This document shows positions 1-63,917 of a stretch of 64,000 nt of DNA, piece by piece. Numbering within the stretch: the stretch's first letter is position 1; the number at the start of each line of letters is the position of its first letter. The DNA lies in the NCBI GenBank assembly GCA_002269645.1, contig NIVC01000037.1, positions 558,001-622,000 on the forward strand, given 5' to 3'. Made by a program: the position numbers and the translations under genes. Under the pieces are notes generated by a model. That model was given only the letters and a program-made list of their open reading frames with translations, was not told the DNA's origin and did not search any database. This stretch comes from Macrostomum lignano (lineage: Eukaryota).

Positions 1-14
1 CTTCTGTGAAGGAT

Positions 15-275
15 AGTGAGATGAAGGGTAGAGATGCAGGGTGAGGGATAGTATGACAGTAGAAGATGAAGATTAGATATGTAGAGTGAGAGATAGCATG
101 AGAGTGGGAGATGAAGGGTAGAGATGTAGGGTGAGGGATAGCATGAGAGTGGAAGATGAAGGGTAGAGATGCAGGGTGAGGGATAGCATGAGAGTGGAAG
201 CTGAAAGGTAGAGATGCAGGGTAGAGATGCAGGGTGAGGGATAGCATGAGAGTGGAAGATGAATATTAGATATGA
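15..275. repeat. ~45-bp purine-rich degenerate tandem repeat
   Basis: gagatgaagggtagagatgcagggtgagggatagcatgagagtg, about 5 copies. Confidence 0.75.
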
Positions 276-2794: not shown

Positions 2795-3749
2795 GGAGTC
2801 CAAAGTCCTGCAGTCAGCTGTTGATCAGGCAGCAACAGAGGGGAGGCCAAAATCTCAACGGGAATTCAAGCCGACCCCCCAGCCACTTGTTATTCGGCGG
2901 GCAGCAATCCAATGACCCAAGATGCTTTCATGTTTTCTCTGCTTGTAAAGCAGGCAGATTTCCAGACGGAGATTCAGCCGAAATTGAAGCGGACAGGGCA
3001 CTGAAAGCCACTGCTGGGGGGGGGGGCTCGGAGCATTTTTAAGGAGCTTGGCAACTGTCCAGAAAGCTTCAATAAGCCAGGTAAGAGATGATGAAGGCGG
3101 GCTTACAGGTAAAGCCGAGCTGCTGACAGCAGCAGATGCTGTTGGGGCTTCTTTTGGCTTTCCAAATATTCCCATTTCTGCCAATATAGAAGCCAATGGA
3201 ACCGGATTATTGCCTTTAATCCGTCTGAAATCGCGCTTTTAATTCCCCACTATAATCGTAAACTTATACCGGATACGGTATTGTTTGACTACCTGTCAAA
3301 ATCGTTTTTTTTCATGATGCAATGCAGCTGGGGGCAATGACTAGGCGTAATTAAGAGGCTCTTCATATAAGATAGGGAGAATTGGGGGAAGACTGCACGG
3401 GATGAGGCATTGTCGGCCTGACAGCTCCCGGATCCTCTATAAGAACTATAAGTGGGGGGTACACAGCAATGTGTACACATTAGTTTATGCGACTGAGCAC
3501 ACATGCGTTTGTATAGGCCAACTCGGAGCCTCAGTGGGGTTCGATCTCGGGTCCTTCCCAACTCCCCAGTCTGTGTTTACTCACTCAGGCTCCGGTTCTG
3601 GGCTGTCATGGACTGCTGCATACTGAATCTGGACTGCAAACCTTGCTTGTTCAACTTTATTTTCTTCAAAGCTCTCTCGGCTCTATCAAATTCAGGGGGG
3701 TGCAGCGGGGAAGTCCAATAGGAGAAAGACGTCTTGATTCAGATAAAAT

Positions 3750-4092
3750 ATCCAGCTTATGGCTGCTGGCCAGATCAGAGAGGAAAGCTGAGGGAATAGA
3801 AAGAGAGAGAAGAGAGGAGAGAGGAGAGAGAAGAGAAGAGAGAAGAGAGGAGAGAGGAGAGAGAGAGAGAGAAGAGAGAAGAGAGAAGAGAGAAGAGAGA
3901 AGAGAGAAGAGAGAAGAGAGAAGAGAGAAGAGAGAAGAGAGAAGAGAGAAGAGAGAAGAGAGAAGAGAGAAGAGAGAAGAGAGCTGAGAAGAGACACAAG
4001 CCAAGAGTGATCCGGGTTGCTATTGTGAAGTTTCAAAGGACCCGAGGGCCGGATACAGAGGCTTCACAGGGCCGGAGTTTGACAATCCCTTC
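3750..4092. mobile_element. Partial copy of the 30810-32147 hAT element with expanded (GAAGAGA)n
   Basis: gagctgagaagagaca...ttgctattgtgaagtttcaaagg...ggatacagaggcttc...gggccggagtttgacaatccct matches 30985-31075 and 32125-32147. Confidence 0.65.
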
Positions 4093-4669
4093 AATCGATG
4101 ACGAAAAAAAGATGGCTCAAAATTTTTTGTCTGCTTTCAATTGAAAACAACAATTTAATAGAAATTAAAGGGAAAATGCGAGCCCCCCAGAGCAGTCCCA
4201 ATGCGGGCCAACTCAAATGAGAGAACTCAGCCACCAAAGCAGAATGCGCGGGAATAATGGATTGAACGACGCGGAAGCAAAACTATGTCCATTGCGCCGT
4301 GTCCCAGTGCGTGCCAGTGGGCTTCGAATCCACAGAAATTGGGACTCATTCGTGTAGAAAGATAAGCCAACTGCGGGCAGCGGAGCTCGCATGAGATCAA
4401 GGGAAGAATAGGGATTTTTAGCTTTTCTGACAGCTGCGGGCCGCCCCCTGCTCAAACCCTCCTGTGTATTTCTTTCTTTTCAAACTTGATACCGATCAGA
4501 TGATGGCGGCGAAATCTTTTTTGGCCTGCTCGGTTCTCGGACCTGCTTAGAGCCAGAAACCTGTCAGTATGATTTCTATATTGAAGTCCTCCGTGACTTC
4601 CTGGCCACCGAAATCTGATATCCGCGCCGCTCGACTGCCCGACTCCAAATATCCAGGTCCACCAGCGGC

Positions 4670-5335
4670 TCCTTCTCAGTCTCTGCCCTCTCTCCGTCTC
4701 TGTCCTCTTTCGGTCTCTGACCTATCCCGGTCTCTGCCCTCTCGCAGTCTCTGCCCTCTCTCTCAGTCTCTGCCCTCTCTCTCAGTCTCTGTTCTCTCTC
4801 AGTCTCTGCCCTCTCTCTCAGTCTCTGCCCTCTCGCAGTCTCTGCCCTCTCTCTCTCAGTCTCTGTCTTCTCTCAGTCCCCACCCTCTCTCAGTCTCTGC
4901 CCTCTCTCAATCTCTGTCCTCTCTCAGTCTCTACCCTCTCCCGGTCTCTGCCCTCTCTCAGTCTCTGTCCTCTCTCAGTCCCCGCCCTCTCTCAGTCTCT
5001 GTCCTCTCTCAGTCTCTGTCCTCTCTCAGTCTCTACCCTCTCTCTCAGTCTCTGCCCTCTCTCTCAGTCTTTGTCCTCTCTCAGTCTCTGTCCTCTCTCA
5101 GTCTCTGTCCTCTCTCAGTCTACCCTCTCTCTCAGTCTCTGTTCTCTCTCAGTCTCTGCCCTCTCTCTCAGTCTCTGTTCTCTCTCAGTCTCTGCCCTCT
5201 CTCTCAGTCTCTGCCCTCTCTCTCAGTCTCTGTTCTCTCTCAGTCTCTGCCCTCTCTCTCAGTCTTTGTCCTCTCTCAGTCCCCGCCCTCTCTCAGTCTT
5301 GTTCTCTCAGTCTCCGTCCTCTCTCAGTCTCTGAG
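4670..5335. repeat. CT-rich minisatellite (ctctcagtctctgccct variants)
   Basis: Source of the SQSLPSL ORFs. Confidence 0.9.
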
Positions 5336-6643
5336 AAAAAAAGCTATACATTGCTGCTGGTACATCTTACACAACCAATGCTTTGTATAAGCAAAATGCA
5401 CTTAGCAACCAGATCTTGTATAAAAATGTACTCATAATTGAAGGCAGTAAAGCAAGCCTCTCACAGACAAAAATAGTTTTAAATAGAAACCAAACACAAT
5501 TCGCCACGCCTTCCCAGACAGATTTTATAGTCTATTATTGGTGTCTATCTATTATCGCCTCTACAGCAGCGAGCACAGTGTAAAGTAAGTGGCCCCATTC
5601 GCTTTCACTCGAGTGAAGTCCCCAGAGACCTCACGGGCCACAATAGCGCCTCGCTCTATGAACTGGCGAGAAAGGAAGCCAATTATCGCTGAGCCCAGAA
5701 GGGCTTAAGAGAGGGTTACAGTTTTGCTTCTCGCAGCTGAACTCAACTCTTGCAGTCCACAGTCAGCTCTCTTCTCACCTGACCGGACTTCAGGCATGGA
5801 CAAATACCAGCTGCAGGAGTGACTGACAGGTAAGAAGCCCCGACCTGCCCTACCCCCCTCTCAGCCCCAGCAGCAGCTCAAATCGATGAAGCTACTGCAT
5901 AACGGGCAGCGGTGCGAGACCCGGGTCGGTCAAATCTGTGAAGCAATAGATGCGTTCTCAGCTTTTTACAAAACTGTGTGAGCAGTAATTTCTGCTTCTG
6001 GCTCTCTGCGCGATGCCATGCAGTCGCAGAACAAAGAGCTGCAGACACGGATCTGCGGAGTTGGACTCGTTTTTCGCGGTTTTGACTTCAGCTATTCTGC
6101 TGCCGAGTCCCCCTTTCTTCTCCCGACTTCACTCTATCGTGCTCTCACCTCCGCCCACCCACCCTTCAACTTTTTACTGCTGCTCGTTATCGTGAAGTGG
6201 AGGGAGAGAGAGAGAGGGAGTGAAACCGCTTTCCGCTTGGATCCTCGTGATCATTCTCCCCCAAAAAAGCCGGAATCCCCATTGGGATTTCAATTCGGCC
6301 GGGAGCTGGTTGGGAGGGAAGCTGGGCCCGACCCTCCATCCCTACTCCGCCTTCCTCACTCTCCGACCCCCCTTAATCTCCTCAGCCCTGTGACTCATTC
6401 ACTCCCTAGCGCTAGGGCAATTCTTTACATTGGAGACCCCGCCACCTCATCGCGTATTCTCCCCGATCGGACGAGTAAAGTTACCTTCGTTCTGCCGGTT
6501 TCTTCGAAATCTTTATCGGCTCCGCCGTCTCACCCAGAATGGCTAATTGCGCCGTCAGCTCAGTATTGGTCTGCGATTTGATCAGCCCAGCTGCCACAGT
6601 ATCCAGACAGCCTTCTGCCTGCAACCTTTAAGCGTTTAATCTC

Positions 6644-6743
<100 letters not shown>

Positions 6744-7244
6744 TTTTTCAATTCAATTTTTGGCGTCTTCACAAGCTGCAACTTTTGCCTGTTTTGCATA
6801 ATTTTCTAATCCCCTCCCTTGCCTAAATTTTTCTAAAGTCTGCTGTTTTTAGTAGAAAATTTCTGTGGGGAAATATGACTTCCACACTAAAGCAACGAAT
6901 AGCCGGCAAAAAAGAGTAAAAAACTCGCTTTTTTGCCTTGCTTGCTGTCTTCTAAAAGAACTTCCATAAATCCTATTTGACTGTTTTAGTACGCTAAGGG
7001 AATTGGCATTGGTGGTATTGATTTCTGCTCCCGAGCTGAAGAAGATTCTGGCTGGTCTGTTCGAGAGTGCAAAATTGTCTTTTCTGACTAATTTATGAAA
7101 TGTTTCGCCTAAAATGCTAGGGTAGAATTATGGGGATTAAGATTCTGATAAGAGAGTTTCTGAAGGGTGGGATGTCTGAAGCCAGACATTCCATGAGAGT
7201 GAGAATTCTAAGAGGAGTGAGATTCTAATGTGGCTGTAAGGGTA

Positions 7245-7529
7245 GAGATTCCCTGGGGAGAGATTCCCTGGGGAGAGATTCCCTGGGGAGAGATTCCCTG
7301 GGGAGAGATTCCCTGGGGAGAGATTCCCTGGGGAGAGATTCCCTGGGGAGAGATTCCCTGGGGAGAGATTCCCTGGGGAGAGATTCCCTGGGGAGAGATT
7401 CCCTGGGGAGAGATTCCCTGGGGAGAGATTCCCTGGGGAGAGATTCCCTGGGGAGAGATTCCCTGGGGAGAGATTCCCTGGGGAGAGATTCCCTGGGGAG
7501 AGATTCCCTGGGGAGAGATTCCCTGGGGA
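7245..7529. repeat. 15-bp perfect minisatellite GAGATTCCCTGGGGA x19
   Basis: 19 identical units inside degenerate gagattct flanks (7130-7685). Confidence 0.98.
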
Positions 7530-7917
7530 GAGATTCTTAGGTGACAGAATCTAGGGGAGAGATTCTCAGGAAGAGCTTCTCAGGCGAAAGATTTTCAGGG
7601 AAGAGATTCTCAGGAAAGAGATTTTCAGTGGACAGATTCTCAAAGGACAGATTCTCAAGGGAGAGATTGTCAGGAGATTTCAATGCCGACAACAGGATCA
7701 CGTGAAAGCTTGTAAGAACGAGTTCGTAGCTTTCAGCCTCTACTGTGACGCCCGTCTGTCTGCGCCAGGTTTTACTGGTACCTTTCTACGGTAATTGAAT
7801 AATTGCTTTAATTGCGGGGCCTCTTACCGGGCCGGAAAATCGGGTTGCAAAACTGAAGTTTTTTAGTTGCCTTTTCTATATGCGCGCGTGTCAATTATGC
7901 AGACTTCCTGCCGCTTC

Positions 7918-8295
7918 AGAGACATGGTGAGAGTCATAGACATGGTGAGAGTCATAGACATGGTGAGAGTCATAGACATGATGAGAGTCATAGACATGGT
8001 GAGAGTCATAGACATTTTGAAAGTCATAGACATGGTGAGAGCCACAGACATGGTGAGAGCCACAGACATGGTGAGAGCCACAGACATGGTGAGAGTCATA
8101 GACATGGTGAGAGTCATAGACATGGTGACAGTCATAGACATGGTGATGAGAGTCATAGAAATGGTGGGAGTCATATACATGGTGAGAGTCATAGACATGG
8201 TGAGAGTCATAGAAATGGTGAGAGTCATAGACATGGTGAGAGTCATAGACATGGTGAGAGCCATAGAGACATGGTGAGAGTCATGGTGAGAGTCA
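7918..8295. repeat. 18-bp minisatellite GAGAGTCATAGACATGGT
   Basis: Same unit as 2103-2794. Confidence 0.95.
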
Positions 8296-9029
8296 GACAC
8301 AAGGTCTGAAAGCAAGACCGGGCCGGAAAGTCAGGTGATGAATCTGAAGTTTTGCTTTCTGCTTCAACTAAAGCGACTTCCAGCGTTGTGCGTCAATTAT
8401 GCAGACTTCCTGCTGCTGTCAGAGGGAGTTCGGGCGCGGGGGGGGGCCTGACAACCCAGTCAAACACACAGCCATGCACACAGTCAAACAAAGACCAGAA
8501 GGAAGACGAGTCATTGGGGAGATGGAGGGGATTAAATTAAATTCGCATAGCGCTTCCTGCAGTCTTGACTTTCTCTCCAGAGAAAGGGAGGGGGTTGTTA
8601 AGCCTGGCTGCTGGGATGGCGGTGGGCAAACACGAGCCCATTATCATCATCATCATCATCATAGAGCCCCCAGATGGACCTCCAGTTGATGACGTCACAC
8701 TGGGCGGGCCGGCCTACCAGTTTAGATATTGGGACGCGCCGCCACCCCCGCTGAGGGTCAGGCGGGTGGATTATGCAACTCACCAGTTGGCAGGGCCAAG
8801 CTTTTTAGGGCTTTTGGAGGCTCACTTTCTTAAGTAGCCGTTTGGAGGGCCAGCTTCAAAGGGCGCACCGCGTGGCGTCTTTGTTGCAGCTGGACAAAGA
8901 CAATTATAGAAAATCTCTGTGCTAGCAGAGCAGTTCAATATCCTCGATCTTACGCGCTTGTAAAACTTTAAAATATACAAGCTATTCCATGACAGCCTGA
9001 TTCTTAAAATCCAAATGAGATGATTTGAG

Positions 9030-9200
9030 GCACTGATTTTGGCGCCCTTCTTAGCACTGATTTTGGCGCCCTTCTGACACTGATTTTGGCGCCAATCTTA
9101 GCACTGATTTTGGCGCCAATCTTACGCTCGTAGCACTGATTTTGGCGCCAATCTTAACACTGACTTTGGCGCCAATCTTAGTCCTGATTTTGGCGCTCCT
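9030..9200. repeat. ~24-bp tandem repeat gcactgattttggcgccaatctta
   Basis: About 6 degenerate copies. Confidence 0.85.
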
Positions 9201-9837
9201 AAGAAAACTGTGAAGTTTGGTAATTAATCCTGTTACCTGTTACTGTCACAAACAATTTGACAAGAACAGGCATGACTTATTGAACTGAGTTCTTTGTTTT
9301 AATTTCTACTGTAGTCAGTTCAGTGCTTTCAAAAAACTGAAGCAGTGGAAGTAATTTTGCTCCAATTGCATTTGTCTCACCAAAAAATATACACACTCCA
9401 CTGCAGCTACTCGCCTAACAAAGGAAACTTACTCTCCATGGTACGTGCACTGACTAAGACAGAAGATTTGCATGCCTCAGTGATATACAAATCGGTCCCG
9501 ATACCGCACCATGTGGCCTTTATCCCACCAGAGACTGACAGCTCCACGGAGTCTTTCTTAGGGGCAAGAATTGCGCGCTCGATTTGATTCAGCTTGAAAA
9601 TACTGCGACTCCGGTCTGGCTGCAGAAACAAATTGTAACCAGCTCCACTGCAGCTGGCGCCATTTATCTGACTGTGTAGCTGAGAACAGCAAATTTGTCT
9701 TCATTCTGTAATTTAACTTACTAGGTAGGTATAGAGAAAAAAGTTTCTACTGGCTACTTGGACGACTAAACAAGTAGTATGTTGAAGATGTTTGCTTTTA
9801 TCTATCAATGAAGCTTATACAACGTGGATGTGAACTG

Positions 9838-9990
9838 AAGAGTCAAAATGGAGCCCGAAGCATTCGGTCCCGATTTCTCTAAGCCATACCAACATATAAA
9901 ATCTCGTCATTCAAGCATTTGAAGCTCCAAATGAAGGGGATTGGCGTAGAGAAACCGGGACCCAATGCTTTAGGCTCCAGTTTGACTCTT
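9838..9990. mobile_element. Foldback MITE-like inverted repeat
   Basis: ~53-bp imperfect arms aagagtcaaaatggagcccgaagcattcggtcccgatttctct / agagaaaccgggacccaatgctttaggctccagtttgactctt. Confidence 0.6.
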
Positions 9991-10021
9991 AAATTCAACA
10001 TTCTCTGTTCAAAGACCTGAT

Positions 10022-10607
10022 CCTGTGTGGCGCCCTCAGTGTGGCGCCACCTGTGCTGCGCCCTCAGTGTGCCGCACTCAGTGTGGCGCCACCTGTGCTG
10101 CGCCCTCAGTGTGGCGCCACCTGTGCTGCGCCCTCAGTGTGGCGCCACCTGTGCTGCGCCCTCAGTGTGGCGCCACCTGTGCTGCGCCCTCAGTGTGGCG
10201 CCACCTGTGCTGCGCCCTCAGTGTGGCGCCACCTGTGCTGCGCCCTCAGTGTGGCGCCACCTGTGCTGCGCCCTCAGTGTGGCGCCACCTGTGCTGCGCC
10301 CTCAGTGTGGCGCCACCTGTGCTGCGCCCTCAGTGTGGCGCCACCTGTGCTGCGCCCTCAGTGTGGCGCCACCTGTGCTGCGCTCTCAGTGTGGCGCCCT
10401 TAGTGTGCCGCACTCAGTGTGGCGCCACCTGTGCTGCGCCCTCAGTGTGGCGCCACCTGTGCTGCGCCCTCAGTGTGGCGCCACCTGTGCTGCGCCCTCA
10501 GTGTGGCGCCACCTGTGCTGCGCTCTCAGTGTGGCGCCACCTGTGCTGCGCTCTCAGTGTGGCGCCACCTGTGCTGCGCCCTCAGTGTGGCGCCACCTGT
10601 GCTGCGC
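10022..10607. repeat. 28-bp minisatellite CCTCAGTGTGGCGCCACCTGTGCTGCGC
   Basis: About 21 near-identical copies. Confidence 0.97.
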
Positions 10608-11904
10608 CGTCAGCTGGTGCTCCCAGTGAGGCGCCCAAAAAATTAACCCCACGCCGAAGAAGTAGCGGAACTTTTCTTAGAAACGACTCGAAAGAGAACG
10701 AGAGCAAAGGAAATACAGAGAAAGATCTTTCAGGGAAATCGGGAACTCAGAAATCTGACAAGGCAAGCTGGAAGAGACGCCAGGCAGAGATGGCTGAGGC
10801 CCGATAAACTCAATCCGAGGGGCTCAAGCCAGAATTTCTCCAAGGCGGCCCTGCAGCCGACCGCTGCTGCTCCCAGAAGAATTCTCTACAGAAAGAAGAA
10901 AACTGGAGTTAAAAAGCAGAAGAAAGATGAGTCACGGAAATCCCGGATGAGGCCAGGAGCTCCAGCAGATCCGTTGAAACTGCTTTTTTGGAGCAAGACG
11001 AACGAAACAAAAAAAGAATTTGGCCACCTTGTCAGGTCAGCCGGGCTATCAACTCCTTGGTACACGAGGCTGGGGAAACAGACTGGACAACTTTTTGCTG
11101 GCAGAAAAAAACCCCCTCTAGAAGAGATGAAAAAACTGGTTAAGGTTGGGGGGAGAAGGTTAGGAAGAGAGAAGTGAAACACAGGACCCCTCAGAGCCGG
11201 GAGGGGGGCCAGGTGGGAATTAAAAGTTACAGCCGGGAAGCAGCAGAAAGCGCCTCCTAGAAGCAGTCAAGTGTCGGGGTGTGAATTTCCTGCAGACATT
11301 CAGGTGACGGCCGCAGAGGTTTAAACCTCTCCCTTCTCAATTCTCCTGCAAGCGGCTTCGATTTTCCTGCCGCGACAACTTTTTGTCTTGCCGCCACTTT
11401 TTGTTTCTTCACTTTGCTGCTGCTGCTGCTGCTGCTAAGAAGCAGGAGAAGCCGAGGGCCTTTCCCAGCGGGCGTGCTGAGCTGCCTCAATTCTCTTCTC
11501 CCCCCCCCCTACCAACTCCCTTTTACTTTTCTCAAGCAGCCTCTTCACGGCACTGCAGCCCCGCGGCCGCAGTCAAAAACGAAATGAAATATTTGTGACA
11601 GTGTCTGGTGCGCCTCGTCAGGTGTTGATGAAGCATGCAGCCTCGTCTCTTTTTCTCCTGTTAAAATTTTAAACCTCATCGTCATGTAGCCCCGCGGGGT
11701 GGTGAAACTGAGAGCCTGGGGCAGCCTGTGGAGTCTGGAGGCTTTTGGCTCAGGCTGTCAAAAAGCTGATCCATTCCTCATAGCAGCTTGCACCTCAAAT
11801 TTTATTCTCAACCGTCTTTCAGAGAATTAGAAATGCAAGGTAATTAAAAAAATCCGCGAATTTGATTACTTGAGGAATGTGATCGAAAACTTGAAAAATG
11901 TGGA

Positions 11905-13110
11905 TACCTGGGGAATGTGAACACTTGGGAATGTGAACACTTGGGAATGCGAATACTTGGGGAATGTGAACACTTGGGAATGTGAACACTTGGGAATGTG
12001 AACACTTGGGAATGTGAACACTTGGGAATGCGAACACTTGGGAATGCGAACACTTGGGAATGTGAACACTTGGGAATGTGAACACTTGGGGAATGTGAAA
12101 ACTTGAGGAATGCGAACACTTGGGAATGTGAACACTTGGGAATGTGAACACTTGGGAATGTGAACACTTGGGGAATGTGAACACTTGGGAATGCGAACAC
12201 TTGGGAATGCGAACACTTGGGAATGTGAACACTTGGGAATGTGAACACTTGGGGAATGTGAAAACTTGAGGAATGCGAACACTTGGGAATGTGAACACTT
12301 GGGAATGTGAAAACTTGGGGAATGTAAACACTTGGGAATGCGAACACTTGGGAATGTGAACACTTGGGAATGTGAACACTTGGGGAATGTGAAAACTTGA
12401 GGAATGCGAACACTTGGGAATGTGAACACTTGGGAATGTGAAAACTTGGGGAATGTAAACACTTGGGAATGTGAAAATTTGGGGAATGTGAACACTTGGG
12501 AATGCGAACACTTGAGGAATGTGAACACTTGAGGAATGTGAACACTTGGGGAGTGTAAACACTTGGGAATGTGAAAATTTGGGGAATGTGAACACTTGGG
12601 AATGTGAACACTTAGGAATGTGAAAACTTGGGAATGTGAACACTTGGGAATGTGAACACTTAGGAATGCGAATACTTCGGGAATGTGAACACTTGGGAAT
12701 GTGATAACTTGGGGAATGTGAACACTTGGGAATGCGAACACTTGAGAAATGTGAACACTTGAGGAATGTGAACACTTGGGAATGTGAACACTTGGGGAAT
12801 GTAAACACTTGGGAATGTGAACACTTGGGAATGTGAACACTTGGGAATGTGAACACTTGAGGAATGTGAACACTTGGGGAATGTGAACACTTGAGGAATG
12901 TGAACACTTGAGGAATGTGAACACTTGGGGAATGTGAACACTTGGGGAGTGTAAACACTTGGGAATGTGAAAATTTGGGGAATGTGAACACTTGGGAATG
13001 TGAACACTTAGGAATGTGAAAACTTGGGAATGTGAACACTTGGGAATGTGAACACTTAGGAATGCGAATACTTCGGGAATGTGAACACTTGGGAATGTGA
13101 TAACTTGGAA
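11905..13110. repeat. 16/17-bp minisatellite GGGAATGTGAACACTT
   Basis: Long array with internal block duplications. Confidence 0.97.
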
Positions 13111-13496
13111 ACGTGAACGTTTTGGGAATGTAAACAAACTTGTGAATTGGAAAATTTGGAGGTTTCAAATATTGTGGGAATGTAGGCTCAGTGAAAAGCC
13201 ATATTTAAATATTTAACCACAGTCAAACGCATTACTTAAATCAAAACCGATTATATTATCAATAACTAGCTGGGCCAGCGTCCATCAATCAAAACTGGCT
13301 GTCAACCGGATTATTTAGATATTAGTCAGTTAGTAAGTTGGGGCCACTGCCGAAAATCAAGGCGGCAGAAATCCTGAATTTAAGCTCATCCCCATCTCTG
13401 CAATTCTGTTTTTTTAAACGGGAGATTTCTCAAGGAACTTACTCCGTTCGAATGGTAGCATGTAGAAAAACGGATGCTATCGTTAGCGCGCATCGA

Positions 13497-13967
13497 ATAA
13501 GCGCGCAGATTTTGGTAGAGTAACCCATAAGCGCGCAGATTTTGATAGAGTCCCCCTTAAGCGCGCAGATTTTGGTAGAGTCCCCCTTAAGCGCGCAGAT
13601 TTTGATAGAGTCCCCCTTAAGCGCGCAGATTTTGGTAGAGTCCCCCTTAAGCGCGCAGATTTTGGTAGAGTCCCCCTTAAGCGCCCAGTTTTTGGTAGAG
13701 TCCCCCTTAAGCGCCCAGTTTTTGGTAGAGTCCCCCTTAAGCGCCCAGTTTTTGGTAGAGTCCCCCTTAAGCGCGCAGATTTTGGTAGAGTCCCCCTTAA
13801 GCGCGCAGATTTTGGTAGAGTCCCCCTTAAGCGCGCAGATTTTGGTAGAGTACCCCTTAAGCGCCCAGTTTTTGGTAGAGTCCCCTTTGAGCGCCCAGTT
13901 TTTGGTAGAGTCCCCTTTGAGCGCCCAGTTTTTGGTAGAGTCCCCCTTAAGCGCCCAGTTTTTGGTA
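13497..13967. repeat. 30-bp minisatellite AGCGCGCAGATTTTGGTAGAGTCCCCCTTA
   Basis: About 16 copies, bracketed by inverted taagcgcgca/tgcgcgctta. Confidence 0.97.
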
Positions 13968-14337
13968 CGCTTATAGCAGTGCGCGCTTATGCAGCCTTCA
14001 CTAAAGAAAAGGCCCAATTAGGTGCCGATGCATTCTACAAAAAATCCGTCTAAAAGATTCGAAATCAGTACTTTTAATTTGCTTGGTTTGCGGTATTCGA
14101 CTCGCAGCCCCCCCCCCCTCTTAAGTTACTGCGCGCTTCTCACCGCAGAATCGAAAGCACGCCAGAGGGCAAATTCTCAGTTTCACGACTTGAGCAGATG
14201 CTTAAATTTCTTAAATTTTAGAATAGCCGAGGTTCTAAAATATATTTATTGGCTGTATCGGGTCTGAGCAGCATCGGACCTACCACCGAGGTTTTCAATT
14301 CAGAAAGGGTTAGCAGGGCTTGCTTGGTTCGCCTTTT

Positions 14338-15034
14338 TCACAGGCTTCTGCTTTCGATTTTGCTGCTTGCTGCTTCTGCTGCTTCAGCTACCCGCGTGGC
14401 GGAGAGGGGAGGACGGGTGGAGGGCGGAGAAATTAATTAACTATTCGGTGTTAATTAAAGTTTTATGCTCACGCCGGGCGAGAGAAATGCCGTATCCTAC
14501 ATGCATATTAGCCTGTATACAGTGCCGGCTTTAGATGGCTCAGTCTGGGCCGCTTGCGTTTCCAACAGCCAGCTGAGCTCAGCTTTGACTCTTCTGTCAC
14601 TGAACCTGCCTCTCAGCTTTGATTCTTCTGTCACTGAATCTGCCTCTCAGCTTTGACTCTTCTGTCACTGAATCTGCCTTTCAGCTTTGATTCTTCTGTC
14701 ACTGAATCTGCCTCTCAGCTTTGATTCTTCTGTCACTGAATCTGCGCCTCTCAGCTTTGATTCTTCTGTCACTGAATCTGCCTCTTAGCTTTGACTCTTC
14801 TGTCACTGAATCTGCCTCTTAGCTTTGACTCTTCTGTCACTGAATCTGCCTCTCAGCCTTCTTCATCATTCCTCTGAATCTGTGTTTTGAGCCCCAAAAG
14901 ATGAAATACTTACGCGCCTCCTCGGGCAGCCTGTCGGCATCGGGTGCCAGCATGAGGTGCGCCGGCGTCAGCAGCAACAGCGTCAGCAGCACCAGCATCG
15001 GTGCGAGCTGCAGTCGACCCCAGGTGTTCGCCAT
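14338..15034 (-). CDS. Candidate small secreted peptide precursor, 3 exons, 64 aa
   Basis: Exons 14914-15034 (MANTWGRLQLAPMLVLLTLLLLTPAHLMLAPDADRLPEEA, donor GTAAGT), 14473-14496 (24 nt; ctaat...tgtag acceptor, GTGAGC donor), 14338-14387 (long pyrimidine tract acceptor, TGA). Hydrophobic signal-peptide-like core; AATAAA at 14250-14245. No homologue recognised. Confidence 0.45.
14577..14860. repeat. 34-bp minisatellite in intron 1 of the candidate peptide gene
   Basis: ttcttctgtcactgaatctgcctctcagctttga, about 8 copies. Confidence 0.95.
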
Positions 15035-15194
15035 GCAATCAGCACAAAGGTAAACCAATAAACTAATTTTCACACCTGTTCCTTCAAGAGAATTATCAAA
15101 GCCGATAATTGAGTCAGTTGGTCATTTTTCTTCTAACCAAAGTTTTTTCTCTAGAAAAATGTTTCTCTTCCCTCTACTCGCGCGATCAAAAAGG

Positions 15195-15325
15195 GGAAAG
15201 TGGGCGGAGCTGGACGGAGGAGAAGGCCGCAAACATTGCGGGTTTGGCTCACGCATGGCGAACCAATGAGACGAGGGGGGGGGGGAAAGTGAGAAGGCAG
15301 CGACGTGAGTCACATGGCTGGCTAA
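15195..15325 (-). promoter_or_regulatory. Putative promoter cluster upstream of the small secreted-peptide gene
   Basis: GGGCGG box (~15202), CCAAT (~15263) and overlapping GACGT/TGAGTCA (CRE/AP-1-like, ~15302-15312), 170-280 nt upstream of ATG 15034. Motif inspection only. Confidence 0.3.
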
Positions 15326-15559
15326 ATGCAGCGGCTGAGTCCGCTTCATTCTGCACTGCCACTTCATTGGGGCACTGGGGCTCGATGCATGCCAGACAGG
15401 TTGTCAGGAAGGGCTGCTGCTTGATTGACAAGCCGGACAGCTGGCAAAGAGCTGGCATTTGGGAGAAATCTGATCAAAATGAGTTTCCATGCTCAGTGCG
15501 GGCCCATTGTGCTCGCATGCTGTTCACGGTACTACTTATCTTTCTGACTCTGTATGCCT

Positions 15560-16472
<913 letters not shown>

Positions 16473-17159
16473 CAAGATATTTTAATTACGAAAGCTTAGA
16501 AAAAAGCAGGTCAAAAATATTCGCAAAGAATTTCCGGAGGCAAATATGACATGAAGAGTGACAAGCGGAGAGGGCAGCAATAGCAGACAGGGCTGAACAA
16601 TGAGCCGGTACTCTATAAATATATCGCAGAGAGTCACTAGGCGGTTTCGCTCTCTCCAGCTGCCGAGTAATCCGATACGCGCAAGGCGTCCGGCTGGAAT
16701 CGGCGCCCAGCTGCAGCCGCCCTCTGCCGCCGTGTATCCAGGCTAGCAGCAGGCCCAGAACTGGGCTATGCAATGCAGAAAGATCTGAAGTGGCCAAAGT
16801 CAAACAATGCCGACACCCTGGCTGCAGAGTCTGCTACCAATTTTTTCGACTCCTAAAATGTGTAAATAATAGCTTCATCAGCCATGGGTTGAGCTCGTAT
16901 CACTTTCCCCGTGGGACTTTTCTGATTCTTGTCAAACACGGCGGGCCTGCTGTGCCTGTCAGCTCTGCCGGAGACAATGGGAGCTGCGCTGGTTGCAAAG
17001 TGGCAAGGGAATTTGCTCTTTGTCTGAGACTCTGGCATCAGTTCCCTTTGTATTTTTCATAATGGGCCAGCTGATGTCGTTCATACATTGCCTGCTGCTG
17101 CGGTCTCAGAGGGAATGGGAATACCTTCCATATATTTCAGCACTGTGGTTACTCAGGAT

Positions 17160-17542
17160 TTGAGCTGAGATGATTGGGGATCTGAGCTGAGATTCCTGGG
17201 GATCTGAGCTGAGATTACTGGGGATCTGGGCTGAGATTATTGGGGATCTGAGCTGAGATTTCTGGGGATCTGAGCTGAGATTTCTGGGGATCTGAGCTGA
17301 GATTTCTGGGATATATGAGCTGAGATTACTGGGATATATGAGCTGAGATTTCTGGGGATCTGAGCTGAGATTTCTGGGGATCTGAGCTGAGATTTCTGGG
17401 GATCTGAGCTGAGATTTCTGGGGATCTGAGCTGAGATTACTGGGATATATGAGCTGAGATTTCTGGGGATCTGAGCTGAGATTACTGGGGATCTGAGCTG
17501 AGATTACTGGGGATCTGAGCTGAAATTATTGGGGATCTGGGC
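17160..17542. repeat. 22-bp minisatellite GGGGATCTGAGCTGAGATTTCT
   Basis: About 17 copies with variants. Confidence 0.95.
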
Positions 17543-17569
17543 AGAGTTCACTATTACTAGCACACACAC

Positions 17570-17740
17570 GCTCACACAGGGTGTACATGTACATCCACCC
17601 TGACTTTCTAAACGTCAGGCATGTGTACACTCTCCGTGCCTTGGGGGTTGGCCCTGGTGCGTACGAACCACAAATTAATGGGGCCGTTCAGGGGAATCAA
17701 ACCCCTGTGACGCTACTAAGCCCCTTTAACACCACTACCT
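17570..17740 (-). mobile_element. Diverged SINE fragment, same family
   Basis: cacgctcacacagggtgtaca...caggcatgtgtacac...gccttgggggttggccc...ggggaatcaaacccc. Confidence 0.5.
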
Positions 17741-18204
17741 AAATTGGCAAAGGTTAAAAAAACACTGGACATTGTCTTCAAGTAATTCGCTCTGTGACTG
17801 CAACACGCACTGGTCTGGTGACTGTCAAGTGGTGCTGCTTGGCCTAGCAGGAGAACCACTTTTTCCGCTATTTTTTTAGACCAAGCATCCTTGTCTCATA
17901 CATAGGTAGGTGCTTCAGTGAGTTCAACAGGACGCCATTCTCAGCGCAAATCCAACTGCTACAAGCAGACCATAAACTCTTCATCGTTTGGGAAAAGCAG
18001 CACAAGCACTTCGGGACAAATTCAGGAAATTCACCCCAGGTTCCGGAGTTCAGTGCTCAACAGGGGGTTGGGAGGAGAGTTGGCCGTGAGCCTGCTTTGT
18101 TCTGCTAGAGATTATAATGGTGTGGCTACAACTTACTTTTTATTGGCAGGAGTCTTTCTGCTCTATTTTGCGTTTATTTGTGTTTCTTTGGTCTGTTTTA
18201 GTTT

Positions 18205-18962
18205 GTGTCTGTTGCAGTCTGTGTCTATTGAACTCTGTGTCTATTGCAATCTGTGCCTATTGCAATCTGTGTCTATTGCAGTCTGTGTATTGCAATCTGT
18301 GCCTATTGCGATCTGTGCCTATTGCAATCTGTGCCTATTGCAATCTGTGCCTATTGCAATCTGTGCCTATTGCAATCTGTGTCTATTGCAATCTGTGTCT
18401 ATTGCAATCTGTGTCTATTGCAATCTGTGTCTATTGCGATCTGTGCCTATTTTTTGCAATCTGTGTCTATTGCAATCTGTGCCTATTTTTTGCAATCTGT
18501 GTCTATTGCAATCTGTGCCTATTGCAGTCTGTACCTATTGCAATCTGTGTCTATTGCAATCTGTATCTATTGCAATCTGTATCTATTGCAATCTGTGCCT
18601 ATTGCAATCTGTGCCTATTGCGATCTGTGCCTATTGCAATCTGTGCCTATTGCAATCTGTACCTATTGCAATCTGTGCCTATTGCAATCTGTCCCCATTG
18701 CAATCTGTGCCTATTGCAATCTGTATCTATTGCAATCTGTGCCTATTGCAATCTGTCCCCATTGCAATCTGTGCCTATTGCAATCTGTATCTATTGCAAT
18801 CTGTGCCTATTGCAATCTGTATCTATTGCAATCTGTGCCTATTGCAATCTGTATCTATTGCAATCTGTGCCTATTGCAATCTGTATCTATTGCAATCTGT
18901 GCCTATTGCAATCTGTATCTATTGCAATCTGTGCCTATTGCAATCTGTATCTATTGCAATCT
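18205..18962. repeat. 16-bp minisatellite TATTGCAATCTGTGCC
   Basis: Source of the Cys-rich ORFs 17918-19127. Confidence 0.97.
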
Positions 18963-21614
18963 GTCTGTCTGTTAGATTTGGACTTGATATTTTTACTTTT
19001 AGAATTTAAAGTATCTCTTGACAAATATTTTTTGACATTTTGGTTTAGTTTTGTATTTTTTGTCTATCTGAGGCGACAGAAAAAGTTGACAGCCACAGCA
19101 GACACTCTCTACGGTACGAGCCAATGAACTGCCGGGTCGCATTGAGAGTCGCAATCAGCGCTTTTATCGCGAACAATGGAGGATCTGAGGGGGGGGCGGC
19201 TATTCACAGCAGAAAGTTAGGAACAAACGGCTAAGCAAAGAGCCTATTAATTGGGTGTTGAGTTTCCAAGGCTTTAGCCGAAGCCTCCTCTAAAAAGGAA
19301 CTCCAACACTTGAGTGCCAATTCTGCCGTTGGCCAGCCAAAATAATTGAGAATGAAAGGCGCGGATAGCTACGAGTATATTGTGAGTGGGAGAAACCGAC
19401 ACACTGCCGCTTCTCCGACGGTCTCTCTCTCTGGCGCGCATTTTCACACTTTCCCTTTTCCTCTCCTCATAGCCCTCGCACAGGCGGCGAGCGCTGTATA
19501 AGGGGAGAAACTCAAGCCGCAATTGAAAGTACCACACAGAGCGGCATTATAAAGGAGCGCATATATAGCGTTCTCAGAGCCGTCTCAAAGCGCTACTTGA
19601 GGCGCCGCCGCGCCTGTCCACTTTTAAATATATGTTCAGCTCCAACTCTTGATTAAACTGGAGTTATACAAAAGACAGCAGCTTTTGTTGCCAAGTAAAC
19701 AGCGCGCAGAAAAAGCGATTATTTTGTGCGCAAAAGTAACAAAGACCCTTTGCTTGATTCGAACACGGAAGTTGCAGTCTACACGCCGGTCACATGGTGT
19801 ATTGATTCCGTAACAAATTCCAAGATTCGAGCGCCTTTCTGTTACTAACAGACTAATTTAACAGACTACTAACAGTAAACCAATGGCGAAATTTTGCAAT
19901 AAAAGCGAATTTTCCATTAAGTAACAGATCAGGTGCTTGAAATTAGGCAAAAAATAGTCTTTTTTCACAGTCAATATTACATATTCAGAGACAGCTTCAA
20001 AAGTCTAAAAAGTCAAAATCCCGAAAAATAAAAATGCACAAGAGAGATGACCCTCCACAGCAGATCCTTCACAGAACGCACAGATCCTTCACAGCACAGA
20101 TCCGCCTCAGCACAGACCCTCCTCAACACAATCTCCACAAAATCACCCTGCCTTGGGGTTGGCCCTTATGGCATTACGTTCACCGCCGAGTGCCCACCCC
20201 AACTTGGCGTGTTGCCACCAAGGACGACTAGTGTCTTACCAGTAAATCTTTCTTCCTGTATCTGCTACCCTGCTAGTTTGGAGTTTCGTCTCTTTTGACG
20301 TTCTTTCTTGTTTATTTTGACATAATAAAATCAGCAGTTTTAGATGAATTTTTTAGTATATAGGACTGTACTGTTGACAAGTATTTTGAGCTGTTAAAGT
20401 CCGAATTATTCAACTTATTGATGTCTTAACTGAAAGAGCATATGTTACTGCCTATTCTGCGACAAAATAAGCATCTTACGATCAATATCGTGCACAGGAG
20501 ATACATTAAAAAATCGACCTCCAATGAAATTCTGAGTCTAGTGTCCTTCTACTTAAGTAGTCCTTGATTGCCACCCAGAAAAAAACTGACAATCGAAGGT
20601 CACAATTCACAGTTCTAATGAGTGTGGGATATCCAGTTCCGCCAGAGTGTCAGAGCATGGCAAATATATTTATTAGTATTTTAATAGGCTTAGAATGTAC
20701 ATGCAAATATAATATTATATCATATTTGAATCCCCAACTCAGCACATACTACTCTCAGCGGATACAGCATATAACAATGGCAAAAGACAGTCACAGACAA
20801 GTAGACAGAGCAGCACACAGCTAGATAAAAAGCAAATTTAACAAATAAATGAATCGCACAATTTTTTTATCAGAGAAATTTCGCTGACAACATTTTTTGC
20901 ACAAGATTTAATTGTTGATAAGACTGAATCAAACCGAGTCAGTGAGTAAAGGCTCAGTGCTAATTACCCTCTAAACAATGCCGCATATGTCTCCTATTGC
21001 AAATCTCCAATCAGCCAATGGAAAGTGTGCATACAGCAATGTTAATTGCATTATTTATTTACTTGATTCTTAAAAAGCTCTATAGAAACCATAAAGAAAT
21101 ATATTAAAATGCTGCCCAAGTCATGCAATCACAAGCACACACACATTTATACAAGCAGCAAAACAATCACCCGCACCACTTGACTACTACTTTTGAGCGT
21201 CTGTAAAGAGTTTTGTCGTGAAAATTTGTGCATGAAAATAAATTAATTGCATATTATTTACTAGTTTTCATTAAACCATCAATTAATTATTGTAACGTCA
21301 GATCTGCGTCGGGTTTTCTTAGCCATAGACAAAAGCTCGGAACAAATATTAACTCAGATTGTAGTCAGTATGAACCATGGGGATGATTAAAAGCATAGAC
21401 TGCTTGTCTGCCTTAAATTTGGGGGTACAACTACACTACTTAATTATCTTTACTCTATTATTTGTCTATTGTAAATTTATATCGCAGAAGTCTCTGATAA
21501 TGAGCACTGCAGAGATTCGGCATTGCAGCTTTTACCATAGACAACAAAGGAATCTTCAGTAGCCAATTGGTGCGAACGGGGCTTCGCGGAGCAAAATTGA
21601 ACCCCCCCCGTTTA

Positions 21615-22234: not shown

Positions 22235-25200
22235 TCAGGATCTGTGCAGATTGCGGCTGAGCACGCTGCGCACGTCGGTGACAAACCGCAGCGAGTCCAG
22301 CACTGGCAGCAGCGCCAGTAGGGCCGTGTCCGAACTGTCCGAGAACCACGACACGATGGGGATGGCGTTCTCTGCGGATGGTGGGTTTGGATAAGAGAGA
22401 TCGCCTACTGAAGAGTAGCATGAGATGAGTGCGACGAGGATCCTTAAAGTGTGTCTACAAAATGTACCCACAGGCGAGATTCTGGCTCAGTGGTTGAGAT
22501 GGATTGATGACAACAAATAACTCAGACACCTGTCGCGAGTTTGAAACTCACTTTTGAAACTCATAAACTCGGGATCTAGTTAATTATTAGAGCTTTTTAT
22601 CACGGCGAGGCTAGGACCTGGGAGACTGGCCTAGCAACTGAGGATCTAAGAGGCTGGCCCAGCAACTGAGGATCTGAGAGGCTGCCCTAGCAACTGAGGA
22701 TCTGGGAGACTGGCCTAGCAACTGAGGATCTGAGAGGTTGGCCCAGCAACTGAGGATCTGGGAGGCTGGCCCAGCAACTGAGGATCTGGGAGGCTGGCCC
22801 AGCAACTGAGGATCTGAGAGACTGGCCCAGCAACTGAGGATCTGGGAGGCTGCCCTAGCAACTGAGGATCTGAGAGGCTGCCCTAGCAACTGAGGATCTG
22901 AGAGGTTGGCCCAGCAACTGAGGATCTGGGAGGCTGGCCCAGCAACTGAGGATCTGAGAGGCTGCCCTAGCGATTGAGGATCTGAGAGGTTGGCCCAGCA
23001 ACTGAGGATCTGGGAGGCTGGCCCAGCAACTGAGGATCTGAGAGGCTGGCCCAGCAACTGAGGATCTGGGAGGCTGCCCTAGCAACTGAGGATCTGGGAG
23101 GCTGCCCTAGCAACTGAGGATCTGAGAGGCTGCCCTAGCAACTGAGGATCTGAGAGGTTGGCCCAGCAACTGAGGATCTGGGAGGCTGGCCCAGCAACTG
23201 AGGATCTGAGAGGCTGCCCTAGCGATTGAGGATCTGAGAGGTTGGCCCAGCAACTGAGGATCTGGGAGGCTGGCCCAGCAACTGAGGATCTGAGAGGCTG
23301 GCCCAGCAACTGGGGATCTGGGAGGCTGGCCCAGCAACCGAGGATCTGGCAGAGTAACACAGCTTGAGGACCCGGGGAATGTGGAAGGCAGGTAATAGGC
23401 ACTGGGGAACACAAAAAGCAAGAATAAAGTCAACCTCTCCCACCTGGAAAAGTGCGATAAGCTCCCGGAGAATAGTCCAGAATAAAAACGGAGCCCAGGT
23501 CGGGCGACACGGCGGCCAGATTCTTGATGTAGCTGCCGTTGTCAACTTGGCAGTCCTGCCTATAGAAGCCGCGCTTCAGAATCTGGCGGCCATTGTCCAG
23601 CCGCTGGGCCACGGCCTCGCCGTAGATCTGGAGAGATGCGGTGAACACCACCAGGTCGTACCACTGGCTGACGACGTCTAGAAAGAAGTCAACGTGAGGC
23701 CGCTTGCGCACGAAGAAGCGGACATTGTGCCGGTCGATGCGCACCTGCGGAAGCGGACAATGGGGTGGATAGTTGATTGCGGCCGAACTGAAATCCGCAT
23801 TATTCCACACCTCGTACTAAAATCCCATTATTTCACATCTCATAGTGAAATCCCATCATTCCACACCTCATAGTGAAATCCCATTATTTCACATCTTATA
23901 GTGAAATCCCATTATTCCACACCTCATACTGAAATCCCATCATTCCACATCTCATAGTGAAATCCCATTATTCCACACCTCATACTGAAATCCCATTATT
24001 TCACATCTCATAGTGAAATCCCATCATTCCACACCTCATAGTGAAATCCCATTATTTCACATCTTATAGTGAAATCCCATCATTCCACACCTCATACTGA
24101 AATCCCATCATTCCACATCTCATAGTGAAATCCCATTATTCCACACCTCATACTGAAATCCCATCATTCCACATCTCATAGTGAAATCCCATTATTCCAC
24201 ACCTCATACTGAAATCCCATTATTTCACATCTCATAGTGAAATCCCATCATTCCACACCTCATAGTGAAATCCCATTATTTCACATCTCATAGTGAAATC
24301 CCATCATTCCACATCTCATAGTGAAATCCGCATTATTCCACATCTCATACTGAAATCCCATCATTCCACATCTCATAGTGAAATCCAATTATTCCACATC
24401 TCATATTGAAATCCCCATTATTCCACATCTCACATTGAACTCCTATTATTCCACATTTCATACTCAAACTCTCAAACTCACGTGAACAATGAAGTCTGCT
24501 GGCTGTTTTGTCTGGCCTCCCATCTGCACCAGGCCGTCATGCTGAGAGTGAATCAGAGTCTCGTCCAAATCCAGCACAAGGGTTTTGCGCCTGACCCGGC
24601 CTGCAGTTGGTGGCATCGGGCCAGTTTGCTTGTGCCAAAAGTTACAATAAAAATATTGCATTGCATTGAAAAAATTAATAGTAAACTTACTTAGTCGCAA
24701 TTTGGAATGCGGCGACAGTGGAGCAATGTCATATCTGACTGTTCTGTATTGCTGGATCTGGGAAAGATATTTATAGATTAATATTCAAATTCAAATTTAG
24801 TAAGATTTATTTAAACATACCTTGCAACTTCATTTTTGTTGTCCTATATTTTTCTATTGACTTTTCAGTTTATATTTCCATTTTCTATCCCATTGTATCA
24901 GTAGCGAAACCAGAAATTTTTCAAGGGCGGATTCTGAGGGTAAAGTCCCGGGAGGGGGGGGGTGGCGGAGGGGTGGCTCTGTTTTTGGCGAAAATTCGCT
25001 TGGTCTCCCCTTTGATTTTTTTTTTGGTCCCCCGCCTAAGGGGGGGGGGAGGGACCGCCCTCCCCGCCCCCCCTGGTTGCGCCACTGCATTGTATTGATG
25101 TTTTGTAGAGTTCTAATGTAACCATAATTTTTCTATATTTATATCCATACTCTATAGCCATTTAAAGTTTCTCCTTATAGTCTATATATATATCTATAGC

Positions 25201-29813: not shown

Positions 29814-42489
<12,676 letters not shown>

Positions 42490-44233: not shown

Positions 44234-63917
<19,684 letters not shown>

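What the first reader, a model, noticed from the sequence alone, without database searches (positions are those of the whole stretch)
14245..15320. Hidden three-exon gene candidate for a 64-aa secreted peptide with a 24-nt microexon
Seen: predicted product MANTWGRLQLAPMLVLLTLLLLTPAHLMLAPDADRLPEEARYGISLARPEAAEAASSKIESRSL*. Support is a signal-peptide-like hydrophobic core, strong donors (GTAAGT, GTGAGC), a branch-like ctaat..tag and a long pyrimidine tract, phase 1-1-1 compatibility, AATAAA ~90 nt after the stop, and GC/CCAAT/CRE-AP1-like motifs upstream. Acidic xA/xP spacers and single Arg sites recall peptide-precursor processing (inference). I recognise no known neuropeptide, and there are no dibasic or amidation sites. 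Exons 2-3 were chosen by eye.
Basis: partly seen in the sequence, partly recalled or inferred. Interest (0 to 1): 0.7.

Follow-up and report, generated by a model that had tools for sequence, protein, structure and literature searches.

The report
Probable signal-peptide exon; three-exon gene unsupported
The sequence contains one block that looks like an ordinary first exon encoding a secretion signal, but the proposed 64-residue three-exon peptide gene with its 24-base microexon is no better supported than thousands of equally legal paper splicings.

Summary
The ATG is at 15034, GTAAGT follows 14914, the 24-nt and 50-nt blocks are where stated, AATAAA is at 14250-14245, and the translation matches.

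Only exon 1 stands out from background. It is a 0.69-GC block in 0.35-0.45 flanks. Its codon-position GC and CTG-Leu usage resemble the window's recognisable exons. A canonical signal-peptide layout ends at a perfect phase-1 donor.

Exons 2 and 3 are not supported:
- 6160 three-exon and 84 of 88 two-exon GT-AG models also reach a stop before the AATAAA.
- The microexon has a weak acceptor, and leaving it out keeps the frame.
- Exon 3 uses GCA 4/4 and GAA 3/3, against 7% and 29% in real exons here.

No homolog, Pfam family, Rfam family or peptide-processing motif was found. The protein databases are poor in eukaryotes, so the homology negatives are weak.

Best reading (about 0.5): a genuine signal-peptide first exon whose partner exons are not those proposed. 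Main rival (about 0.35): a chance ORF in a CTG-rich block of satellite-laden intergenic DNA.

The parts
15035..15400 (-). Upstream flank, a putative promoter/5'UTR. It is bounded further upstream by the (CTGTCTCTCC)n and (CTAT)n arrays at 15560-16472.
   Evidence: 3 CCAAT/ATTGG, 1 GC box and 2 AP-1-like sites, against 0.8, 0.13 and 0.29 expected. No TATA, Inr or CRE. The start context is gattgcATGg, with T at -3, which is weak. A 3-codon uORF starts at about 15126. Arrays.
14914..15034 (-). Candidate exon 1 coding part: 40 codons plus 1 nt, phase 1. Layout: n-region MANTWGR, h-region LQLAPMLVLLTLLLLT, c-region PAHLMLA, then PDADRLPEEA.
   Evidence: Translation. GC 0.69, by codon position [0.75, 0.42, 0.88]. 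It is the strongest of the 4 signal-peptide-like ATG-ORFs in the window, and the only one with a downstream GTRAGT donor. Periodicity statistic 0.35. CTG makes up 10 of 13 Leu codons, against 57% in real exons. The maximum-likelihood GC block is 14913..15032. Caveat: TRF marks 14965-14996 as a 15-nt x2.1 repeat inside the hydrophobic core.
14908..14913 (-). Donor GTAAGT immediately after exon 1.
   Evidence: There are 18 GTAAGT on this strand in 64 kb. Reading through instead gives a 65-aa ORF that ends in the first minisatellite unit.
14578..14857 (.). 34-bp x 8.2 minisatellite, lying inside the proposed intron 1.
   Evidence: 94% matches.
14473..14496 (-). Not supported.
   Evidence: The acceptor ...ctaatatgcatgtag| has pyrimidine fraction 0.44, ninth of 88. 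The length is a multiple of 3, so skipping it keeps the frame.
14338..14387 (-). The acceptor is good but the content is not coding-like.
   Evidence: Acceptor pyrimidine fraction 0.72, tied best of 88. Codons are GCA 4/4 and GAA 3/3, against 7% and 29% in 1327 real codons. GC by codon position for e2+e3 is [0.56, 0.64, 0.44].
14245..14250 (-). AATAAA hexamer 88 nt after the proposed stop.
   Evidence: The hexamer occurs 42 times on this strand of the window, or 0.66 per kb, so it is not informative.

Best explanation
The block 15034..14914 on the minus strand is most likely the genuine first coding exon of an unidentified gene for a secreted or type-I membrane protein, transcribed leftwards. 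It would encode an ER-targeting signal peptide with three parts: a basic n-region MANTWGR, a Leu-rich h-region, and a small-residue c-region. Signal peptidase would be expected to cut after TPA or MLA. About 15 residues of mature N-terminus follow, and the exon ends at a phase-1 GTAAGT donor.

That means the 24-nt microexon, the 50-nt last exon, the 64-aa product and the peptide-precursor processing. The true partner exons are either beyond the left edge of the window, which implies a first intron longer than 14.9 kb through satellite-rich DNA, or too short or too fast-evolving to recognise.

Shown: the sequence features, the composition and the chance rates. Inferred: that the exon is transcribed, translated and spliced at all.
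For: - The signal-peptide layout is the strongest of 365 ATG-ORFs in the window. It is the only one followed by a GTRAGT donor after the predicted cleavage site. Only 4 of 200 composition-matched shuffles gave a hit this good with a donor.
- GC is 0.69 against 0.35-0.45 in the flanks. GC by codon position is [0.75, 0.42, 0.88], like the Dullard-like exons at [0.63, 0.39, 0.73] and [0.62, 0.44, 0.84], and the BRSK kinase exons.
- This periodicity is reached by 0.2% of non-coding windows against 6% of exon windows. It persists outside the CTG-rich core at [0.79, 0.50, 0.82].
- Leu is CTG in 10 of 13 codons and Glu is GAG in 2 of 2. These are the codons preferred in 1327 recognisable codons of the window.
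- The maximum-likelihood GC block is 14913..15032. It therefore starts at the ATG and ends at the GTAAGT. On the plus strand neither edge has a splice signal.
- The block is single-copy in the window, so it is not part of a dispersed repeat.
- The 22 kb left of the Dullard-like gene otherwise holds no recognisable gene.
- From established knowledge (not tested here), phase-1 introns are typical after signal-peptide exons.
Against: - No transcript data could be consulted.
- No homolog was found in any search, though these databases barely cover eukaryotes. A conserved Dullard exon found only 12 candidates, the best at 72% identity.
- No phase-compatible downstream exon with coding-like composition or a Pfam domain exists in the 14.9 kb to the left.
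- The hydrophobic core is a CTG-rich 15-nt duplication in a window that is 26% tandem repeat. A Leu-rich frame can therefore arise without selection.
- A signal-peptide-like score at least this high occurs in 44% of shuffled windows when no donor is required.
- A crude codon log-odds model does not prefer the sense frame over two others. The codon-aligned antisense, Gln-rich frame has mirror-image periodicity.
- The start context has T at -3. Ala codon use in exon 1 (GCG 3, GCA 2, GCC 1) is not the preferred one.
- Verified exons here do not have such sharp GC edges; their offsets are 11-50 nt. The exact edge coincidence should therefore not be over-weighted.
Confidence: 0.5

Rival explanations
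1. Chance ORF. A short CTG-rich, GC-rich block in satellite-laden intergenic DNA happens to start with ATG and to be followed by GTAAGT. Nothing is transcribed or translated, and there is no gene here.
For: - 26% of the window is tandem repeat, and TRF flags a 15-nt duplication inside the hydrophobic core.
- Signal-peptide-like ORFs are expected about 5 times per window, and 0.155 times per window with a GTRAGT donor.
- Three frames of the block are open, and they score alike in a codon model.
- No downstream exon, homolog, Pfam family, TATA or Inr was found.
- The -3 start context is weak.
Against: Only 2% of shuffles give a hit at the observed signal-peptide score with a donor. The 3-base GC periodicity sits in the top 0.2% of non-coding windows and persists outside the CTG core. 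Leu and Glu codon choice is the preferred one. The block's edges coincide with the ATG and the donor on this strand only.
Confidence: 0.35
2. A complete small gene ending at the AATAAA at 14250. Exon 1 would splice to the well-marked acceptor at 14387, giving a two-exon, 56-aa product MANTWG...EEAPEAAEAASSKIESRSL. The reader's 24-nt microexon could be included as well, giving 64 aa. Either way the product would be a lineage-restricted small acidic secreted peptide.
For: The acceptor at 14387 has the joint-best pyrimidine tract of 88 AGs in the stretch. It keeps the frame with or without exon 2. AATAAA lies 88 nt after the stop. The donors GTAAGT and GTGAGC resemble real donors in the window.
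Against: - 84 of 88 two-exon and 6160 three-exon models also end in a stop, so the fit is not evidence.
- Exon 3 uses GCA 4/4 and GAA 3/3 against 7% and 29% in real exons. The joint probability is about 6e-7 if codons were drawn from real usage. GC3 falls from 0.88 to 0.44.
- The microexon acceptor is weak, and its CTAAT lies only 13 nt from the AG.
- Both acceptors are TAG, whereas most real ones seen here are CAG.
- AATAAA is frequent.
- There are no processing sites and no family match.

My estimate for the exact three-exon model is about 0.03. For the two-exon version it is about 0.07.
Confidence: 0.1
3. The GC-rich block is coding on the opposite (plus) strand, as a Gln-rich internal exon (...RRRQQQQRQQHQHR...).
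For: The codon-aligned antisense frame is open from 14891 to 15058. It has the mirror-image GC periodicity and a similar codon log-odds score.
Against: No AG acceptor or GT donor lies at either edge of the block on the plus strand. No coding-like plus-strand segment flanks it within 1-22 kb.
Confidence: 0.03

Closest known systems
Ordinary first coding exon encoding a Sec-type (ER) signal peptide, followed by a phase-1 intron
   Same: The n/h/c architecture, about 25 residues to a small-residue cleavage motif, a short hydrophilic continuation, a phase-1 GTAAGT donor, and codon-position GC like local exons.
   Different: No downstream exons, transcript or homolog could be tied to it. The hydrophobic core overlaps a 15-nt tandem duplication.
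Arthropod/metazoan neuropeptide or peptide-hormone precursors (prepropeptides)
   Same: Only the N-terminal signal peptide and the small predicted size.
   Different: No dibasic or monobasic-plus-Gly amidation sites and no repeated peptide copies. No known peptide motif occurs anywhere in the 15 kb downstream. No Pfam family reaches its curated cut-off. The best is Prepro-orexin at 13.2 bits against a cut-off of 22.6, E 0.09, over the signal-peptide part only.
Microexons (27 nt or shorter) of animal genes
   Same: The length of 24 nt, a multiple of three, with GT-AG borders.
   Different: Known microexons are defined by transcript evidence and strong flanking signals or conservation. Here the acceptor is weak, no data exist, and the exon is dispensable for the frame.
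Lineage-restricted (orphan) small secreted peptide genes
   Same: A short ORF, a signal peptide and no homologs.
   Different: Absence of homologs here is largely a database limit. The proposed mature part has non-coding-like codon use.

Membership tests
   No RNA-seq is available. The species appears absent from the protein and contig collections.
   The donors GTAAGT and GTGAGC are good. Acceptor 14387 has pyrimidine fraction 0.72, while acceptor 14496 has 0.44 with its CTAAT only 13 nt from the AG. Real acceptors here are mostly Y-rich plus CAG.
   Exon 1 passes with [0.75, 0.42, 0.88] and CTG-Leu. Exons 2+3 fail with [0.56, 0.64, 0.44], GCA 4/4 and GAA 3/3.
   6160 three-exon and 84 two-exon GT-AG models also give an ORF with a stop before the AATAAA.
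Secretory signal peptide | Positively charged n-region, uncharged hydrophobic h-region of at least 9 residues, and small residues at -3/-1 | tested here: met
   My own von Heijne-style heuristic gave the top score of 365 ATG-ORFs. SignalP was not available.
Neuropeptide / peptide-hormone precursor | Basic cleavage sites flanking the bioactive peptide(s), often with Gly for amidation | tested here: not met
   The 64-aa product has none. No motif clusters occur in any minus-strand frame of 1-15200.
Neuropeptide / peptide-hormone precursor | Sequence match to a described precursor family | tested here: not met
   Pfam gave 0 families for the 64-aa and 56-aa products. The read-through ORF gave only a sub-threshold Orexin hit. 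Homology searches were empty.
Neuropeptide / peptide-hormone precursor | Conservation of the mature peptide in related species | not testable with these tools
   No related genome was reachable. The nearest relative's contig L001 shares no DNA similarity with the window.

The most novel reading that the evidence does not exclude
The locus is a complete, lineage-restricted gene for a tiny acidic secreted peptide of 56-64 aa. Exon 1 would splice to 14387, with or without the 24-nt microexon, and the transcript would be polyadenylated near 14230. It would have no relatives in any described peptide family.
Probability: 0.08. Interest if true: 0.35.

Novelty: new member of a known kind. Interest (0 to 1): 0.15.

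Why it matters
If exon 1 is real, it marks the 5' end of an unidentified secreted-protein gene in a stretch that otherwise looks empty and satellite-filled. That is useful for annotating this genome but biologically ordinary. The three-exon peptide gene would be only mildly interesting even if true, because orphan small secreted peptides are common, and present evidence speaks against it. The main value of the re-analysis is methodological. Frame compatibility, a stop codon and a nearby AATAAA do not support an eye-picked splice model. Codon-position composition separated the one credible exon from the two that are not credible.

Tried and rejected
I replaced them with concatenated stop-free minus-strand segments, which gave no domain.
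- **A codon log-odds model** trained on the window's long exons is dominated by GC content. It does not separate frames: sense 23.7, antisense 28.1, third frame 23.5. I did not use it as evidence for the frame.
I searched the read-through ORF instead and got 0 hits.
- **A metagenome contig scan** with the exon 1/read-through peptide matched 600 patterns, none confirmed.
- **A literature search** for the string MANTWGRLQL found 0 papers.
- **Rfam and tRNA scans** found nothing.
- **A self-BLAST of the locus** found no second copy in the window.
- **An inverted-repeat search** for transposon ends found only short chance pairs and the C12/G11 homopolymers.
- **A neuropeptide motif scan** of all minus-strand frames found only isolated chance G[KR][KR] sites.
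- **A search for the true exon 2** used phase-1 acceptors with a good pyrimidine tract and an open frame. It gave 58 candidates, none coding-like. A periodicity scan was also empty.
- **GC change-points as an exon-edge detector** were not reliable when calibrated on verified exons, with offsets of 11-50 nt or worse. I therefore down-weighted the perfect edge coincidence at exon 1.
- **Synteny through a relative's contig** (L001, RagA next to a Dullard fragment) gave no RagA hit and no DNA similarity in the window.
- **A Pfam scan of plus-strand and upstream segments** was prepared but not submitted. By eye the segments look non-coding, and the compositional scan had already found nothing there.

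Full report
**Setting**

The window is eukaryotic, arthropod-like in gene content, and unusually rich in micro- and minisatellites. TRF masks 26% of it.

Three genes can be recognised:
- A Dullard/CTDNEP1-like phosphatase gene lies on the minus strand. Its exons are about 24600-24482 and 23744-23444, and the last exon ends near 22241.
- A DUF5580-family gene lies on the plus strand at about 38274-42456.
- A BRSK/SAD-kinase gene lies on the plus strand at 44234-61777.

The finding lies on the minus strand, about 7 kb downstream of the Dullard-like stop. It sits in a 22-kb stretch in which I found no other gene.

**Checking the observation**

- e1 is 15034..14914, 121 nt, ending ...GCG CG|GTAAGT.
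- e2 is 14496..14473, 24 nt.
- e3 is 14387..14338, ending in TGA.
- AATAAA is at 14250..14245.
- The proposed intron 1 contains a 34-bp x 8.2 minisatellite at 14578-14857.
- Read without splicing, the ORF is 65 aa and stops in the first repeat unit.

**Is it more than chance? Exon 1**

With a crude von Heijne-style test, the window has 365 ATG-ORFs of at least 35 aa. Four are signal-peptide-like. The candidate scores highest and is the only one with a GTRAGT donor after the predicted cleavage site.

In 200 shuffles that keep local composition:
- Signal-peptide-like ORFs appear 5.1 times per window.
- A score at least as high as observed appears in 44% of shuffled windows.
- With a correctly placed donor the rate falls to 0.155 per window.
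- At the observed score with a donor, only 2% of shuffled windows qualify.

So the signal-peptide look alone is worthless, and the combination is moderately unusual.

Composition adds independent weight.
- Exon 1 is 0.69 GC in 0.35-0.45 flanks.
- Its GC by codon position is [0.75, 0.42, 0.88]. The Dullard-like exons give [0.63, 0.39, 0.73] and [0.62, 0.44, 0.84]. The BRSK kinase exons give about [0.55-0.65, 0.23-0.35, 0.58-0.70].
- The periodicity statistic of 0.35 is reached by 0.2% of non-coding 120-nt windows, against 6% of windows inside recognisable exons.
- Periodicity persists when the CTG-rich core is removed: [0.79, 0.50, 0.82].
- CTG supplies 10 of 13 Leu codons and GAG 2 of 2 Glu codons. 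These are the preferred codons in 1327 codons of recognisable exons.
- A maximum-likelihood segmentation puts the GC-rich block at 14913..15032. Its edges are therefore the ATG and the GTAAGT. On the plus strand neither edge carries a splice signal.

Cautions on exon 1:
- TRF marks a 15-nt x 2.1 duplication inside the hydrophobic core.
- Three frames of the block are open, and a simple codon model does not prefer the sense frame.
- The -3 base of the start context is T.
- Ala codon choice in exon 1 is not the preferred one.
- Verified exons do not show such sharp GC edges, so I do not lean on that coincidence.

**Is it more than chance? Exons 2 and 3**

Between the exon 1 donor and the AATAAA there are 88 AG and 24 GT dinucleotides. 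84 of the 88 two-exon models and 6160 three-exon models yield an open frame with a stop before the AATAAA. "Phase 1-1-1 compatibility" therefore has no discriminating power.

The microexon's acceptor has a pyrimidine fraction of 0.44, ninth of 88. Its branch-like CTAAT lies only 13 nt from the AG. The microexon is 24 nt long, so omitting it leaves the frame unchanged and gives a 56-aa product. Nothing in the sequence calls for it.

The acceptor at 14387 is good, tied for the best tract at 0.72, but what follows is not coding-like.
- Codon-position GC for e2+e3 is [0.56, 0.64, 0.44].
- All four Ala codons are GCA, which is 7% of Ala codons in real exons here.
- All three Glu codons are GAA, which is 29%.
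- The stretch is essentially a (GCA/GAA)-type low-complexity sequence.

AATAAA occurs 0.66 times per kb on this strand. Upstream, the CCAAT, GC-box and AP-1-like hits are mildly above expectation: 6 in total against about 1.2. There is no TATA, Inr or CRE, and the motifs were chosen after the fact.

**Relatives and families**

Nothing was found in any search:
- The 64-aa product in the 5.8-billion-protein index.
- The read-through ORF in 1.84 billion representatives.
- Metagenome contigs.
- The literature.
- Pfam for the 64-aa, 56-aa and read-through products. The only hit is a sub-threshold Prepro-orexin match of 13.2 bits against a cut-off of 22.6, covering only the signal peptide.
- Rfam and tRNA scans.

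These negatives are weak. A highly conserved Dullard exon retrieved only 12 candidates, the best at 72% identity. The collections therefore hardly cover this lineage.

**Where would exon 1 splice?**

I looked for a partner exon in the 14.9 kb to the left.
- Pfam on all minus-strand open segments of at least 33 aa outside repeats gave nothing.
- A frame-aware periodicity scan gave nothing convincing.
- A list of 58 phase-1-compatible acceptors with a decent pyrimidine tract contained no coding-like ORF.
- No neuropeptide-type motif clusters were found.

If exon 1 is real, its partners are either outside the window or too small or divergent to see.

**Verdict**

I weighed the chance rate of such an ORF-plus-donor, 0.02-0.15 per window. 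I set it against a plausible rate of real, unassigned signal-peptide first exons in a window of this gene density. I then discounted for the missing downstream exons.

My resulting estimates are:

| Reading | Probability |
|---|---|
| Chance ORF in a CTG-rich block | about 0.35 |
| Complete small gene ending at 14250 (exact three-exon model about 0.03, two-exon version about 0.07) | about 0.1 |
| Plus-strand Gln-rich exon | about 0.03 |

Mechanistically the best reading is ordinary: co-translational ER targeting by a cleavable signal peptide, followed by a phase-1 intron.

The peptide-precursor idea fails its defining tests. It has no basic processing sites, no amidation signal and no family match. 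Transcript data would settle all of this at once.

Noticed in passing
window 1-20000 and throughout: Very high density of tandem repeats: 26% of the window is masked by TRF. Examples are (CTAT)x172 at 15794-16472, a 16-nt unit x75 at 11911-13136, a 28-nt unit x19 at 10073-10613, a 30-nt unit x16 at 13498-13967, and a 15-nt unit x20 at 7240-7536. Many give long spurious ORFs on both strands.
   Followed up: partly
window 22241-24600, minus strand: Dullard/CTDNEP1-like phosphatase gene (NIF domain). Exons are about 24600-24482 (DLDETLIHS), 23744-23444, and a last exon ending near 22241. It is only 58-81% identical to the nearest database proteins, so the lineage is poorly sampled. An unexplained G/C-homopolymer-rich block lies at 24945-25083.
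   Followed up: partly
window 38274-42456, plus strand: DUF5580-family gene with N, middle and C domain pieces at 38274-38459, 41096-41863 and 42316-42456. It has long poly-Gly and poly-Pro runs.
   Followed up: partly
window 44234-61777, plus strand: BRSK/SAD-type kinase gene. An AT-rich first exon is followed by kinase exons at 45290-45470, 48255-48395, 49346-49462, about 51518-51568, 57736-57832 and 58749-58895. A long Ala/Ser/Pro-rich last exon carries the UBA_BRSK and KA1_BRSK domains.
   Followed up: partly
window 34806-35054, 63603-63889, 16622-16797: GC-rich blocks of 0.61-0.65 in AT-rich flanks that I could not assign to any gene. 34820-35020 (+) and 63615-63875 (+) are open and score as coding-like in the crude model, but have no Pfam match.
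   Followed up: partly
window 37911-38080 and 32951-33070: Non-repeat windows whose 3-base GC periodicity is as strong as that of exon 1. The first lies at the edge of a tandem array just upstream of the DUF5580 gene. They could be unrecognised exons.
   Followed up: no
window 14108-14121 and 15269-15282: On the minus strand a C12 run lies upstream of the candidate locus and a G11 run downstream, forming a 14-nt, 86% inverted pair 1147 nt apart. Similar homopolymers occur near the Dullard-like gene. This is probably a genome-wide habit rather than transposon ends.
   Followed up: partly
L001 (Logan SRR18067591 contig, 5349 nt): In the nearest relative found, a Dullard fragment sits 1.2 kb from a RagA/Gtr1 gene on the opposite strand. 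No RagA is present in this window, so local gene order differs or the relative is distant.
   Followed up: yes
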